Assembly (NCBI GenBank): GCA_001949185.1
Contig: BDGG01000002.1
Span: 3,469,826-3,533,825, forward strand
Length of the DNA stretch: 64,000 nt
Direction: 5' to 3'
From: Ramazzottius varieornatus
Lineage: Eukaryota > Animalia > Tardigrada
Below are positions 31,683-35,845 of the stretch, in pieces (the first letter of the stretch is position 1; every line of letters begins with the position of its first letter). The notes beneath the pieces were generated by a model that made no database searches, was not told the DNA's origin, and was given only the letters and a program-made list of their open reading frames with translations. The position numbers and the translations under genes were made by a program.

Positions 31683-31974
31683 TAGTGATGTTCTAATATA
31701 GAAATATTGTAGTAAATTAAGTCATAGTAATTGATTTTCCATCTAGTATTCTTAACATTATTATATTAAGCGCACCGAACCCAAAAATAGAATATAAGTA
31801 TTATATCAGATGCAAAATGGTCCTTCAACTCACTACAGTATATTAAATTAAAAGTAGTGATATAGATGCGAAAAGCATCTACTATATTTAGTAATATCGT
31901 ATTAGGATTCGGTTGGAGGACGAATATTTGGTAACAGAGAGCAGATAAACTTTTGGCTTATTGGAACATCACCG
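31683..31974. mobile_element. AT-rich hAT-type MITE with 8-bp TSD
   Basis: TIRs TAGTGATGTTCTAATA / TATTGGAACATCACCG; 8-bp duplication ATTCATAC at 31675-31682 and 31975-31982. Confidence 0.82.
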
Positions 31975-32223
31975 ATTCATACCGTAGATTTTCAGAGATA
32001 GCTCCACATGGGCATCATTTAACTAAGGCAGCAGAAGCACCGACTACTAATTATACGGATACTTTTACTGTACGCAGGTTCACAGGGTGATGCATCTGAA
32101 TTACCTCAACGTCTAGGGTATTCGACAAAAAACAGATAAATTAGAAAAGTCTAATTAAAAGTAGCAATGTAGAAGTTTAATTAGAAAAGTATTAATCATT
32201 AGACTTATCAGAACAGTCCCTTC

Positions 32224-33530
32224 TTACTGGAACTTCTTGAGCGCCGCCACCACTCTTTCCGGGTTGGGGTGCTCGGCTACCGCACTAACGTGATATCCAG
32301 CCGACTCGAGCGCCTTTGCCGTAGTTGGTCCGATGGCCACGTACTATTCCAAGAACCGAGTATACTGTACATTTGCAATCAGAGAGCTTGGAATGAGTCA
32401 TGAGCAACATACCTTGGTCTGTTTGAAAGCAATACTTTCCGCTCGAAGGATCTGATCCATGAACTGGACCCCGGAAGGACTGAAGAAGACATTCACGTCG
32501 GGGAAACCCTGTAGGAAAAATACTTCACGACTCACGAGCAAGAAACAGTCTTAACAAATATTGAGCGAATGACCGACTTACCAAGGTGGCGATTTGATCA
32601 CGAACTAAGGCTACTAAATTAGGATGAGCCGTAGTCTCGTAGCACTCCAGGAATTCCACAGGTATGTCTTTAGAAAAACAAAAACTTAGATGAGAAATAA
32701 TAGTGGACTAACCGGATGCCACCTTACCGTGCTCGAGAAGAGCTACGCGGAGAGTTTCCAAGCGGAGATTCCCGCAAGGAAACAGTAACTTGATCTGATG
32801 CTTGCTCTTGTTAGCTTTGATTACTTCAGCAAGCGCAGCTTCGTTCCCGGAATTCTCTCCCATAATATTCGTGAGTCCCACATTGCCTGCGAAATCCATA
32901 AAACAATGAAACGTTGGCAAATGATTTCACCCAGATCGTTACCTCAAGTGACGCACAGTTTCGTTGTTATTGCGTGCGAATGTGCGCCATTCGGGAAAGT
33001 GTTCTGAGTGAATTCCTTTATCGCGTCCTAAACGGAAATGATTGAAGAAGTTGTACTGATCGAGCTTACGTGCTTCTGCGGCGGTTCCTTCGCCGATCGC
33101 ATACACTGGCTTTTGGTTCCATTTGGCGAGGTTGGCCTTCCAGTCTGAAACTTGGGAAGTAGAGACACAACATCCCAGTTGCGATAGTTTCTTGTGAGCT
33201 TTACCTCCTTCCAAGGTTCGTTCGGCGATGGCGAGGGCGTCGACGGCTCTTGGGGTGGTCAGTATCAGGCCGGAGTAAGAGTCAGGTCGCATCAGGGCTT
33301 CTTGTAGCTCGGGTACTCCTCTGTCTTGGAAGTTCAACACTGGAATCAGCGCAGTCCTCCACCCTGCATTCGTTAAAGCCTAAAAGGAACCAAAGAGTCA
33401 CAGATTATGCTTTCAAAAATTTCAAATTCACGAGATACTGCATAATCATACTCGGTTGTAGGCGTCTTCGCTATCCGGTGATCGAATCGACTTGTAGACA
33501 AAAGCCAGCGGCTTCTTCTTGTCCGGATCT
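32224..33530 (-). CDS. UROS: Uroporphyrinogen-III synthase domain; appears to be the C-terminal half of an NMNAT-UROS fusion
   Basis: Exons give DPDKKKPLAFVYKSIRSPDSEDAYNR|ALTNAGWRTALIPVLNF...YSGLILTTPRAVDA...|WNQKPVYAIGEGTA|GENSGNEAALA...LLFPCGNL|VEFLECYETTAHP|FFSPSGV|YVAIGPTTAKAL...HPNPE, stop TAA 32224-32226. No in-frame ATG upstream of 33530. Confidence 0.92.
32911..33015. repeat. Palindromic repeat family copy in UROS intron
   Basis: ACGTTGGCAAATGATTTCACCCAGATCGTTACCTCAAGTGACGCAC ... GTGCGCCATTCGGGAAAG. Confidence 0.72.
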
Positions 33531-33592
33531 CTAAGGATGAAACAAATCTAACCAGGGCTGCCACGGCAAGAAAAGACATTATCAAATGTCGC

Positions 33593-34713
33593 TTACAAGT
33601 TGGGGTCTTCAAGGTAAATACGCTCTTCCTCAATGAATTCAGCGACGTTCATGGGCACGATCATGCCGATGCACTGTCCTTGACGGACAGCTTCACGGAC
33701 CGCTGTGGACGAAACTTGGTTCTTGAACCATTCCGGAACCACCACGATATCTTCCTAGAGAAGAACCTCCTGGCCAGCGATAGAGAAGTCAAGTAGAAAA
33801 AACCTTACCGCATATCTGGTCAAGTTGGAGTGACGGAGGATCTCTTCGATGTTGCTACCTTCTCGGGCGATACAAACGATTCCGAACTTCTTGCAGATAG
33901 TGTCAAGCTACATGATTAAAAGGACGAATTGGAGGCTCGTTAATGTATCCACAAAAAGGAGCTTAAGACTGAACTTACGTGTTCTTCCTTCCACAAACCG
34001 GGAACCGTGAACGATTCAATGACATCACTACCGCACAGCAGCATGACTTGCACATGTTCGTCCGTCTCCAGTTCTCTAGCATCCTTGGCGATCTTGGTAG
34101 TAATCTCGTTGTCGGTCTGCCCACCATTGCAGACAACTTGATGGTACTCCAGCGTCTCGATAGTACGCGACCATGTTTTCTGTTCCGTCTCCCATTTGGA
34201 CGACCTACGAAAAAGATGCAGTGAACATTATATCCCAAGCCCAGGTTATCTCGCGCATGACATGACAAACAACCTGGACAAAGTAACGAGTCTGCACAAC
34301 CCTACGCGCCACCTGAAAAAGAATTCATTCAATCGATGTCTCGCGTGTTAGCTTACTTTAGCCACGGTAAATTGTGTTCCTCCAGCGCCAGCTCCACCAT
34401 TCGACAACGCTGCCTTGCGGTAGCTAGGTTCTATAACAGGATGCAAACCTTTCGAAGATGAAACATGGCATGTTCGGGACTGGAATTGGCTCACCTTCTT
34501 TTTATAGTCATCGTGGACTGGGGAAATGATGCCTCCGATGACATTCCATTGAAGCTTGTTGTAGAGATAATCCTTTGCCAGAACTGAAACACATCACAAC
34601 CGATAAAGACATGGGGCATACAGGATTTTTACGCGATCCTTACCGAACATGCGTAGGTGCATGAAGGTGACTGGATTGAAACTTCCGACGCAAACGAGGG
34701 CGACTTTCTTCAT
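33593..34713 (-). CDS. NMNAT: Nicotinamide/nicotinate mononucleotide adenylyltransferase (6 coding exons)
   Basis: MKKVALVCVGSFNPVTFMHLRMF|VLAKDYL...GGIISPVHDDYKKK|NLATARQRCRMVELA...W|WETEQKTWSRTIETLEYH...MLLCGSDVIESFTVPGLWKEEH|FGIVCIAREG|NQVSSTAVREAV...IYLEDPNL*. Contains GSFNP..xMH and the SST motif. Not recovered by the ORF track. Confidence 0.93.
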
Positions 34714-35599
34714 CTCGAAAGCTGAAAACTTTTCGCTCGGCGAAATGCTGCTCCGCTGTAGATAGGGCTATCCAAAGTCCTTACCTAGCTGTTGTAGGGC
34801 CGAAACTGAGGCCTATAATATAGACAATAGCAGCCTTGGCAGGATGAGGATGGAGAAAATGGGAAGCAGAGGCTGCAGAGAAACCGGAAAAGAAGAAGTG
34901 TTTTAACACTAATGGGATTTTTTCCAAACCGGAATCACAATCAAACGAATCAGTCTAAGGAAACATTCTGAGCCGTAGTAGTGATAACGCAGCGCATCGT
35001 TGAAACAGGGTGGTAATTCCCGGTCCAGTACGGTATTGTGATCGAGGGTGTACGAAACTGGGTCTGCCCAGTAACCCGGGTGCGATTTCCCACTATGTTG
35101 CCGTACAGTACAGTATTGAGTATTCACTATTCAGGTGTCAGGACCCTATAGGCTCTAGCGTCACTACGTGACGCATGACGTAATATCTACCCTACGCACC
35201 AACATAATCATTCTGAACTCCGTCTGGGAAGGTAAGACGTAGTGCGGCGGCCATAACGCAAAACATTCAGTTTCGCTACACCTTCTCGCAGCTGCTGCAT
35301 CCGGATGAAACAGTTCTTTACCGCATCAACAGAAGCAGAAAGCATAAAGCTAATCTTAAAGACCCCATGTCAAATCCCAGAGAAAAGTTCCAATACAGCT
35401 GGATGAATAATTTGACGAAAGTCGGAACTTCACACAGTATGAAGGTAAAATGGGTAGAATGTCACGGCAGCCGCAAAATGTCAGCACAGCTTGGTTGTTC
35501 TTCTCTCAGCAGACGAAAACTCTATGTAACTCTGAGCATAGCGAAGCTGTGGAGAACAGAAGAAAGAACAGTCCAGGATTCCTCCGTCCGGGATGAATG

Positions 35600-35845
35600 T
35601 TAGCATCTGATGCCTGTTCCGATAGCCATAAATGTCCCGAAAGTTCCACCACCTTGGATCATGGTCTTGCCAACGTGTTGTATGAGTTCCCGTCCTCTGA
35701 AACCTGCTCTTAAAGCTCCAAACCCACCAAACAACGCTCCGGACGCCATCCCAACGCAAAAGCCAATTCCAAAGCCCAGCTTCATCCTGTCGAAACAGCT
35801 GGGTTGTTGAGCACCGCGGTGCTGAGGTACAGCGGCAACGGGCAT
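35600..35845 (-). CDS. ROMO1: Reactive oxygen species modulator 1 (Mgr2/ROMO1)
   Basis: MPVA...[28 protein letters not shown]...RGRELI...[23 protein letters not shown], the characteristic family sequence. Confidence 0.96.

What the first reader, a model, noticed from the sequence alone, without database searches (positions are those of the whole stretch)
32224..34713. Splice-controlled NMNAT-UROS fusion gene linking NAD+ synthesis and heme synthesis
Seen: on the minus strand the last NMNAT exon ends ...GAC CCC AAC TT|GTAAGC, so the NMNAT stop (TTG TAA, TAA at 33595-33593) lies inside a strong splice donor. The 66-nt intron (33596-33531) is typical in size for this window and ends ...CATCCTTAG. 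The next exon begins A GAT CCG GAC AAG, giving the in-frame read IYLEDPN-L-DPDKKKPLAFVYKS...DAYNRAL into a complete UROS. In the UROS frame there is a TAG ~20 nt upstream of the acceptor and no ATG. The only ATG in the gap (33579) is in another frame, and the first internal Met would delete the N-terminal strand. Only ~60 nt separate the two coding regions, leaving no room for a promoter. Established: NMNAT makes NAD+ and is an oligomeric stress chaperone; UROS cyclises unstable hydroxymethylbilane in heme synthesis; in the animals I know they are separate genes. Inference: UROS here is made only as a C-terminal fusion to NMNAT, and intron retention yields free NMNAT. One splicing choice could then set the ratio of the two activities or stabilise the labile UROS on an NMNAT oligomer. 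I am not aware of this fusion having been described, but could not search.
Basis: partly seen in the sequence, partly recalled or inferred. Interest (0 to 1): 0.9.

Follow-up and report, generated by a model that had tools for sequence, protein, structure and literature searches.

The report
Tardigrade NMNAT-UROS fusion enzyme gene
In the tardigrade Ramazzottius varieornatus, the only gene for the NAD-making enzyme NMNAT and the only gene for the heme-pathway enzyme UROS are spliced into one mRNA coding for one 501-residue protein; two other tardigrades carry the same fusion and no paper found describes it, but nothing seen here suggests that splicing switches between fused and free forms.

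Summary
Transcript contigs from four separate studies each carry the predicted joint 33597|33530 and all 11 other introns removed, as one about 1.85-kb mRNA.

- **Product:** the spliced ORF is 1506 nt, or 501 aa. It is identical to the public protein RvY_04610 (GAU92541.1) of Ramazzottius varieornatus.
- **Domains:** residues 3-236 match human NMNAT1 (E 2e-51) and residues 254-499 match human UROS (E 8e-45). The predicted fold agrees.
- **Copy number:** neither half has another copy in the 55.8-Mb genome. HMBS, UROD and ferrochelatase are present.
- **Conservation:** the same architecture occurs in Hypsibius exemplaris and Paramacrobiotus metropolitanus, and in no other protein found. That spans two superfamilies of Parachela.

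The "splice-controlled" part is not supported. No intron-retaining contig was seen, and the same share of words is held in all 14 RNA-type runs. A stop inside the donor follows automatically from a phase-2 GTAAG donor; intron 3 has one too.

Verdict: a real, constitutive, lineage-specific bifunctional fusion gene. It is already in public annotation under an NMNAT-only name and absent from the searched literature. I did not see this fusion noted before in this scan.

The parts
32051..34923 (-). Whole transcription unit of the NMNAT-UROS fusion gene (RvY_04610): 13 exons and 12 GT..AG introns
   Evidence: One contig per run (1831-1889 nt) covers 32051 to 34851-34923 with all introns removed, in X3, X5, X12 and X14. 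Flanks 31800-32027 and the intron-only bin 32940-33053 have zero depth, so these runs behave as RNA.
34851..34851 (-). A 5' end of cDNA, a likely transcription start. Other contigs reach 34867, 34904 and 34923.
   Evidence: The loose end of the X14 contig at 34851 is the reverse complement of CAGTGGTATCAACGCAGAGTACGGGG. From my own knowledge that is a SMART-type template-switch oligo. No spliced leader is attached.
34644..34713 (-). Coding exon 1, starting at ATG 34713. It holds the GSFNPVTFMH nucleotide-binding motif.
34495..34583 (-). Exon 2 (NMNAT)
   Evidence: Joints; frame.
34357..34430 (-). Exon 3 (NMNAT). Its donor AA|GTAAGC also gives an immediate in-frame TAA if the intron is kept.
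33979..34204 (-). Exon 4 (NMNAT), 75 codons
   Evidence: Hits to human NMNAT1 and NMNAT3 in the PDB. This is the only match in the whole genome.
33809..33907 (-). Exon 5 (NMNAT)
33597..33754 (-). Exon 6, the last NMNAT exon, with the VSSTAVR motif. It ends with TT of codon 239.
33531..33596 (-). Intron 6 (66 nt, phase 2), the fusion intron. It holds the former NMNAT stop TAA (33595-33593) and an in-frame TAG (33550-33548).
   Evidence: Skipped in all four contigs. Sequence and stops.
33452..33530 (-). Exon 7: the linker (DPDKKK) and the first strand of UROS (PLAFVYKS...)
33205..33379 (-). Exon 8 (UROS, TTPRAV motif)
   Evidence: Pfam HEM4 positions 7-55.
33070..33144 (-). Exon 9 (UROS)
32728..32886 (-). 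Exon 10 (UROS, LFPCGNLRLE motif), preceded by the 183-nt intron 33069-32887
   Evidence: Pfam HEM4 positions 89-136.
32582..32667 (-). Exon 11 (UROS, CYETT motif)
32413..32508 (-). Exon 12 (UROS, FFSPSG motif)
32224..32343 (-). Coding part of exon 13 (UROS, AIGPTTA motif), with stop TAA at 32226-32224
   Evidence: Pfam HEM4 positions 199-230.
32051..32223 (-). 3' UTR. All four contigs end at 32051-32053. AGTAAA at 32069 is a possible poly(A) signal.

Best explanation
This is a true fusion gene, not two genes and not a switch. One promoter upstream of about 34851-34923 drives a 13-exon pre-mRNA. Intron 6 (33596-33531) is removed like the other introns, and it takes with it the stop codon that once ended NMNAT. 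The mature mRNA of about 1.85 kb carries a single ORF of 501 codons, for a protein of 56.3 kDa.

The N-terminal half (about residues 1-236) is a complete eukaryotic NMNAT. It adenylylates NMN or NaMN to NAD+ or NaAD. A short, unconserved linker (about 237-245) follows. The C-terminal half (about 246-501) is a complete two-lobed uroporphyrinogen-III synthase, which cyclises hydroxymethylbilane.

Neither half has another copy in the genome, and the heme pathway steps on either side of UROS are encoded. The animal therefore most likely gets both activities from this one polypeptide, in a fixed 1:1 ratio.

The fusion arose before Hypsibioidea and Macrobiotoidea split. The likely route (inferred) is that the spacer between two neighbouring same-strand genes became an intron.

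Shown here: the splice, the ORF, domain identity, single copy, and presence in three genera. Inferred: both activities are retained, the protein stays uncleaved, and the two chemistries have no special coupling.
For: **The mRNA.** Four runs from four studies each give one contig spanning 32051 to 34851-34923 with 12 canonical introns removed, including 33530|33597. No other contig lies on the gene, and depth is zero in the flanks and the intron-only bin.

**The protein.** The ORF is 1506 nt with a single terminal stop. It is identical over 501 aa to public protein P0152 = GAU92541.1 RvY_04610.

**The domains.**
- Pfam on P0152 gives CTP_transf_like 7-207 (2e-18) and HEM4 261-494 (9e-41).
- PDB sequence search gives human NMNAT1 over 3-236 (2e-51) and human UROS 1jr2 over 254-499 (8e-45).
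- The AF2 model has mean pLDDT 90.2. Foldseek gives 1jr2 (TMt 0.73) and 1nup (TMt 0.92).
- Motifs are present and invariant in the three species: GSFNPVTFMH, VSSTAVR, TTPRAV, FPCG, YET, FFSPSG, AIGPTTA.

**Single copy.** HEM4, NMNAT exon 4, P0152 and a spider NMNAT all match only this locus in the genome. HMBS, UROD and ferrochelatase are present.

**Conservation.** Both Pfam domains occur in H. exemplaris OQV17544.1 (534 aa) and P. metropolitanus XP_055332715.1 (496 aa). Both halves are 55-63% identical between species, while the linker is 0-14% identical and varies in length.
Against: - All RNA evidence comes from assembled contigs, which drop rare variants. They cannot prove that one molecule runs from ATG to stop, and they cannot measure a minor intron-retaining or internally started isoform.
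- No protein-level data were available. Cleavage at the linker is not excluded, and enzyme activities are inferred from homology only.
- The H. exemplaris protein has a Met exactly where a free UROS would start (…TQI-MEPLVF…).
Confidence: 0.85

Rival explanations
1. Intron 6 is a regulated switch: splicing gives NMNAT-UROS, and retention gives free NMNAT ending at TAA 33595-33593. The ratio would be tuned by physiological state, such as desiccation or irradiation.
For: The stop does lie two bases into the intron, so a retained-intron mRNA would encode exactly a full-length 239-aa NMNAT. The exon side of the donor (TT|GT) departs from the usual AG|GT. Contigs cannot exclude a minor isoform.
Against: - No contig with intron 6 appears in 4 runs of 4 studies.
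- All 14 RNA-type runs hold the same 0.47 share of words, near the 0.487 expected for a fully spliced mRNA and below 0.524 with retention.
- A stop in the donor follows automatically from phase 2 plus GTAAG, and is also present at intron 3.
- A retained-intron mRNA would carry about 1 kb of spliced sequence after its stop. By inference from general knowledge of nonsense-mediated decay, it would be prone to decay.
Confidence: 0.08
2. A second, shorter transcript starts inside the gene, in intron 5 or exon 6. It would be translated from Met217 or Met221 (ATG 33664 or 33652, in frame), giving a near-free UROS with a short N-terminal tail. The fusion would then not be the only source of UROS.
For: The two ATGs are in frame with UROS. 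Met217 and Met221 are invariant in the three tardigrades, while human NMNAT1 has no Met there. Contigs cannot show internal starts.
Against: No contig end, branch or loose end lies inside the gene in any of the four runs (tables 6-8). No evidence was sought or found for a promoter there. The conserved Mets lie in a conserved NMNAT segment, so that alone may explain them.
Confidence: 0.05
3. The fusion is made as one polypeptide but is cut at the unconserved linker. The cell would then hold separate NMNAT and UROS, and the fusion would only enforce co-expression.
For: The linker (residues about 237-245) is not conserved and varies in length, as expected for an exposed tether.
Against: No protease site or self-cleaving element is recognisable. 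The AF2 model gives the junction a pLDDT of 87-91 rather than a disordered loop. No data bear on it directly.
Confidence: 0.06
4. An artefact: chimeric contigs or a misassembled genome join two separate genes.
For: Contigs across two genes can be chimeric in general, as the caution says.
Against: - The joint is an exact GT..AG excision that keeps the frame.
- It is found independently in four studies.
- UROS has no start codon of its own.
- Three species have the same architecture in independent annotations.
Confidence: 0.01

Closest known systems
Human NMNAT1 / NMNAT3 (PDB 1kku, 1kqn, 1nup)
   Same: Full-length homology to residues 3-236 (E 2e-51, about 40% identity). Same fold (TMt 0.85-0.93). 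The GxFxPxTxxH and SSTxxR motifs are present.
   Different: The tardigrade protein lacks a free C-terminus and runs on into a second enzyme. The internal variable loop (about 105-128) is short and of low confidence.
Human uroporphyrinogen-III synthase (PDB 1jr2) and vertebrate UROS
   Same: Residues 254-499 align end to end (E 8e-45). Identity to a bird UROS is 40% from its residue 17. The fold is the same two-lobed one.
   Different: It has no initiator Met of its own. Its N-terminus is tethered to NMNAT by about 9 residues.
Known HemD fusions: HemC-HemD (PF01379+PF03900+PF02602) and uroporphyrinogen-III methyltransferase/synthase
   Same: UROS occurs as one domain of a bifunctional protein. 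P0175 and P0179 show the HemC-HemD form, and P0177 carries the methyltransferase/synthase name from JGI.
   Different: Those partners are neighbouring steps of tetrapyrrole synthesis. Here the partner belongs to an unrelated pathway (NAD).
NMNAT fused or conjoined with other genes: fish NMNAT1-lipocalin (RBP7) models; bacterial NadR and NadM-Nudix (the last two from my own knowledge)
   Same: NMNAT as the N-terminal part of a longer predicted protein. P0061 and P0165 carry PF01467+PF00061.
   Different: The fish models look like read-through of two genes that also exist separately; P0163 is named retinoid-binding protein 7a. The tardigrade gene has no separate downstream start, no second copy, and is conserved across genera.
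Conjoined (read-through) genes and nematode-type operons with trans-splicing
   Same: Two formerly separate neighbouring genes are transcribed together, with a very short spacer of 66 nt.
   Different: The spacer is removed by cis-splicing in frame. There is no downstream ATG. The cDNA 5' end carries no spliced leader.

Membership tests
Eukaryotic NMNAT (Pfam PF01467 CTP_transf_like) | Pfam model above its curated cut-off | tested here: met
   P0152 scores 67.3 bits against a cut-off of 21, over residues 7-207. Single exons alone were too short to score.
Eukaryotic NMNAT (Pfam PF01467 CTP_transf_like) | Full-length sequence and fold match to solved NMNATs | tested here: met
   1kku at E 2e-51, residues 3-236 against 8-257. 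Foldseek 1nup TMt 0.92.
Eukaryotic NMNAT (Pfam PF01467 CTP_transf_like) | N-terminal GxFxPx(T/H)xxH and C-terminal SxTxxR nucleotide-binding motifs (motif definitions from my own knowledge) | tested here: met
   GSFNPVTFMH at 10-19 and SSTAVR at 201-206. They are invariant in three species and aligned to the human motifs.
Eukaryotic NMNAT (Pfam PF01467 CTP_transf_like) | NMN/NaMN adenylyltransferase activity | not testable with these tools
   Needs an enzyme assay or complementation.
Uroporphyrinogen-III synthase (Pfam PF02602 HEM4) | Pfam model above its curated cut-off over its full length | tested here: met
   P0152 scores 139.9 bits against a cut-off of 27.5, over profile positions 1-230 of 231. 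Exon-wise hits appear.
Uroporphyrinogen-III synthase (Pfam PF02602 HEM4) | Two-lobed UROS fold and full-length match to a solved UROS | tested here: met
   1jr2 at E 8e-45 over residues 254-499. Foldseek rank 1, TMt 0.73.
Uroporphyrinogen-III synthase (Pfam PF02602 HEM4) | Pathway context: the steps before and after are encoded in the same genome | tested here: met
   HMBS, UROD and ferrochelatase are present. HEM4 matches only this locus.
Uroporphyrinogen-III synthase (Pfam PF02602 HEM4) | Cyclisation of hydroxymethylbilane to uroporphyrinogen III | not testable with these tools
   Needs an enzyme assay or hem4 complementation.
Conjoined / read-through gene pair | Both parent genes also exist as independent transcription and translation units | tested here: not met
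   No ATG is available for UROS. There is only one contig path in 4 runs and no second copy.
Operon resolved by spliced-leader trans-splicing | The downstream ORF has its own start codon and a trans-splice acceptor carrying a leader | tested here: not met
   The acceptor at 33531/33530 is joined in cis to exon 6. There is no downstream ATG. The template-switch oligo abuts genomic sequence at 34851.
Regulated intron-retention switch | A detectable retained-intron isoform | tested here: inconclusive
   None appears in contigs of 4 runs, and the word share fits full splicing.

The most novel reading that the evidence does not exclude
The fusion may be adaptive rather than a neutral by-product of genome compaction. 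Tethering UROS to NMNAT could stabilise or localise UROS; mammalian and fly NMNATs form oligomers and act as chaperones. Alternatively it could lock NAD+ and heme supply together for rebuilding respiration after anhydrobiosis, perhaps with minor regulated retention of intron 6 releasing free NMNAT. That would be the first obligate physical coupling of NAD and tetrapyrrole synthesis in any organism.
Probability: 0.12. Interest if true: 0.75.

Novelty: new variant of a known kind. Interest (0 to 1): 0.45.

Why it matters
- **An unusual pairing.** Two essential housekeeping enzymes of unrelated pathways are welded into one protein in an animal lineage, and it is the sole source of both. In the protein searches run here this pairing turned up only in three eutardigrades.
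- **A phylogenetic marker.** It is a clean rare genomic change, usable for tardigrade phylogeny: present in Hypsibioidea and Macrobiotoidea, with Apochela and Heterotardigrada still to be tested.
- **An annotation trap.** Public names call the protein only 'NMNAT 1/3', 'hypothetical' or 'uncharacterized'. Name-based pathway reconstruction could therefore score UROS as missing in tardigrades.
- **A test case.** It lets one ask whether fusions in compact genomes are neutral or functional. First readers of this scan noted several other candidate fusions in the same genome, all still unchecked.

Tried and rejected
- **Exon-wise searching.** Single NMNAT exons gave no significant CTP_transf_like hit because they are too short. 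Identity was settled with PDB hits and the full public protein.
- **Handling of the joined model.** The joined spliced model was never typed or sent to a search tool. Exons were searched by reference. A local script joined them only to count the frame and to test identity with P0152. All later searches used the id P0152.
- **Other tardigrade loci.** The genomic loci of H. exemplaris and P. metropolitanus, and of the fragments P0001, P0002 and P0004, could not be fetched. Whether the fusion intron is conserved in position is untested.
- **Metagenome scan.** A scan with the three-fusion alignment found no relative.
- **Domain-domain packing.** Complex prediction on residues 1-236 against 246-501 gave no verdict (score 0.01). 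That is neither support nor evidence against an interface.
- **Literature.** No paper was found on the fusion, on RvY_04610, or on tardigrade NMNAT or UROS. One search found papers holding 'tardigrade' with 'spliced leader' and 'trans-splicing', and the one I read says nothing decisive on trans-splicing in tardigrades.
- **Rejected readings.** An operon with trans-splicing, a start at ATG 33579 (wrong frame) and a retrogene (single locus) were all rejected.
- **Other long NMNAT-like proteins.** P0023, P0040, P0065, P0074, P0131 and P0134 carry no HEM4 domain.
Full report
**1.

On the minus strand the NMNAT reading frame starts at ATG 34713 and runs through six exons: 34713-34644, 34583-34495, 34430-34357, 34204-33979, 33907-33809 and 33754-33597. 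The last one ends ...GAC CCC AAC TT followed by GTAAGC. TTG TAA (TAA at 33595-33593) would therefore end NMNAT if the next 66 bases were read.

Those 66 bases (33596-33531) begin GTAAG and end CATCCTTAG. The next exon starts at 33530 with A GAT CCG GAC AAG. In that frame a TAG lies at 33550-33548, and there is no ATG before the exon. The only ATG in the intron (33579) is out of frame.

**2. The splice is real and is the only form seen**

The look-up of sequencing runs listed 14 RNA-type runs of one organism from four studies, each holding 0.47 of the sampled words. I laid one run per study (X3, X5, X12, X14) on 31800-35200. Each gave one contig of 1831-1889 nt lying from 32051-32053 to 34851-34923, with twelve stretches skipped. 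All twelve have CT..AC ends on the + strand, that is GT..AG on the minus strand. One of them is 33530|33597, skipping 66 bases.

- Depth is zero in the flanks (31800-32027) and in the bin that holds only intron (32940-33053). The runs therefore behave as RNA, not DNA.
- No second contig lies on the gene. The only other record, in X3 at 35050-35200, is upstream of it.
- The X14 contig ends at 34851 in letters whose reverse complement is CAGTGGTATCAACGCAGAGTACGGGG. From my own knowledge this is a SMART-type template-switch oligo. It marks a cDNA 5' end and shows that no spliced leader is attached.
- A fully spliced mRNA should hold 0.487 of the genomic 31-mers of the query, or 0.524 if intron 6 were also present. 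The observed 0.47 in all 14 runs fits full splicing, but this is only a rough check.

Limits of this evidence: contigs drop rare variants, they cannot give isoform ratios, and they do not strictly prove that one molecule spans ATG to stop.

**3. What the mRNA encodes**

The UROS exons defined by the joints are 33530-33452, 33379-33205, 33144-33070, 32886-32728, 32667-32582, 32508-32413 and 32343-32224. The thirteen coding pieces sum to 1506 nt with one stop at the end. That is 501 codons, with codon 239 (TT|A, Leu) split by the fusion intron.

The joined model was not sent to any search tool. Exons were searched by reference. A local script joined them only to check the frame and to compare with a database protein.

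An all-against-one HMMER search with exon 4 led to P0003, a 496-aa protein with both CTP_transf_like and HEM4. Searching with P0003 returned P0152, which is identical over all 501 residues to my model. P0152 is GAU92541.1, 'hypothetical protein RvY_04610' of Ramazzottius varieornatus, UniProt A0A1D1USU4, named there NMNAT 3. The genome size reported by the genome search (55.8 Mb, 200 contigs) fits that species, from my own knowledge.

**4. Both halves look like complete, working enzymes**

| Test | NMNAT half | UROS half |
|---|---|---|
| Pfam on P0152 | CTP_transf_like 7-207, 67 bits | HEM4 261-494, 140 bits, profile 1-230 of 231 |
| PDB sequence search | human NMNAT1, residues 3-236, E 2e-51 | human UROS 1jr2, residues 254-499, E 8e-45 |
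| Foldseek on the AF2 model | 1nup, TMt 0.92 | 1jr2, TMt 0.73 |

The AlphaFold2 model, built on a 24-row alignment, has mean pLDDT 90.2 and pTM 0.79. The hallmark segments GSFNPVTFMH, VSSTAVR, TTPRAV, LFPCGNL, YET, FFSPSG and AIGPTTA are present and invariant in three species.

Aligned with a bird UROS, fusion residue 261 matches UROS residue 17. A free UROS would therefore start near residue 245, six residues after the splice. The first Met of the UROS half is residue 295, behind the first strands and helices of the model. Activity itself is inferred, not shown.

**5. It is the only source of either enzyme**

In the whole genome, four queries match only this locus: the HEM4 profile, NMNAT exon 4, the whole P0152 and a spider NMNAT. 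The locus is C2:3502052-3504538, which is window 32227-34713. The other CTP_transf_like hits lie elsewhere, and neither NMNAT query hits them.

Porphobilinogen deaminase, uroporphyrinogen decarboxylase and ferrochelatase are all encoded. The heme pathway is therefore in place and needs a UROS.

**6. It is conserved in eutardigrades and was not found elsewhere**

The same two-domain protein exists in two other species:
- Hypsibius exemplaris: OQV17544.1, 534 aa, 61% identity.
- Paramacrobiotus metropolitanus: XP_055332715.1, 496 aa, 56% identity.

These species belong to two superfamilies of Parachela. Between species, the NMNAT halves are 55-63% identical and the UROS halves 57-60%. The linker (237-245) is 0-14% identical and differs in length. 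Both enzymes are therefore under constraint, and the tether is free to vary.

A search that drew its words from the UROS half alone again found only these three, plus a HemC-HemD fusion. None of the other long NMNAT relatives has HEM4. The nearest non-tardigrade hits are ordinary single-domain NMNATs (spider, fishes, mammals) and UROSs (reptiles, birds). These searches have limited reach: word-based candidates, and representatives only. Absence elsewhere is likely but not proven.

**7. How it most likely works and arose**

The simplest reading is a constitutive bifunctional fusion: one promoter, one mRNA, one 56.3-kDa protein, two active sites, fixed 1:1 stoichiometry.

Origin (inferred): two neighbouring same-strand genes were separated by a very short spacer. 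The spacer became an intron whose donor overlaps the old NMNAT stop (TT|GTAA), and the UROS start codon became dispensable. Two details fit this:
- The intron length is a multiple of three.
- H. exemplaris still has a Met at exactly the place where a free UROS would start (...TQI-MEPLVF...). It could be a relic or a coincidence.

**8. Why I do not accept 'splice-controlled'**

- No retained-intron form is seen.
- The intron side of the donor and the acceptor are as good as those of the other introns.
- A stop two bases into the intron follows from any phase-2 intron with a GTAA donor. Intron 3 of the same gene reads AA|GTAAGC.
- A retained-intron mRNA would have about 1 kb of spliced exons after its stop. 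By inference from general knowledge it would be a decay target.

A minor regulated isoform cannot be excluded with contigs. The same holds for an internal start using Met217 or Met221 (in frame; invariant) and for cleavage at the linker. I give these 0.08, 0.05 and 0.06.

The test of whether the two halves pack against each other gave no verdict and counts neither way.

**9. Novelty**

The protein sequence with both Pfam domains is already public. No paper in the searched library mentions the fusion, the locus tag, or tardigrade NMNAT or UROS.

Bifunctional fusions of UROS (HemC-HemD, methyltransferase/synthase) and of NMNAT (fish NMNAT1-RBP7 models; bacterial NadR and NadM-Nudix, from my own knowledge) are known. 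This pairing and its status as the sole source of both enzymes are not. I class it as a new variant of a known kind, of moderate interest.

**10. Tools that were not available**

Noticed in passing
window 35603-35845 (minus strand): An 81-aa ORF upstream of the fusion gene on the same strand is a Romo1 (reactive oxygen species modulator 1) homologue: Pfam PF10247, E 1e-23. The small X3 contig at 35050-35200 may be its 3' UTR.
   Followed up: partly
P0151 (H. exemplaris OQV17544.1), alignment A1 columns about 285-290: The H. exemplaris fusion has a Met exactly where a free UROS would begin (...DTQI-MEPLVFVFK). It also has a 44-residue N-terminal extension absent from the other two species, which may be an annotation artefact. 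Its gene model could not be checked.
   Followed up: no
P0152 residues 217 and 221 (window ATG 33664 and 33652): Two Met residues near the end of the NMNAT half are invariant in the three tardigrades, in frame with UROS, and absent from human NMNAT1. They could serve an internal start if a shorter transcript existed, but no evidence for one was seen.
   Followed up: partly
P0061, P0165, P0163 (fish proteins): Several fish gene models join NMNAT1 to a lipocalin (RBP7) domain, PF01467+PF00061. One NMNAT-only protein is named 'retinoid-binding protein 7a isoform X1'. They look like read-through or conjoined models of neighbouring genes.
   Followed up: no
Public names of P0152, P0151 and P0003: The three fusion proteins are named 'hypothetical', 'putative NMNAT 1', 'NMNAT 3' or 'uncharacterized'. 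None of the names mentions UROS, so name-based pathway surveys could report UROS as missing in tardigrades.
   Followed up: partly
Same genome, other windows (s1-808290, s1-789740 and others): First readers of this scan noted several other candidate in-frame fusions of unrelated enzymes in this genome, for example MCT transporter-arylsulfatase and fucose-1-phosphate guanylyltransferase-glycerate kinase. If real, fusion by loss of spacers may be common in this compact genome. None was checked here.
   Followed up: no
G000:C3:1444533-1445804, C3:4984314-4984679 and C14:1355956-1356165 (L004-L008): Other CTP_transf_like loci in the genome. One has two tandem domains. I guess they are phospholipid cytidylyltransferases, from my own knowledge. 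Neither NMNAT query hits them.
   Followed up: partly
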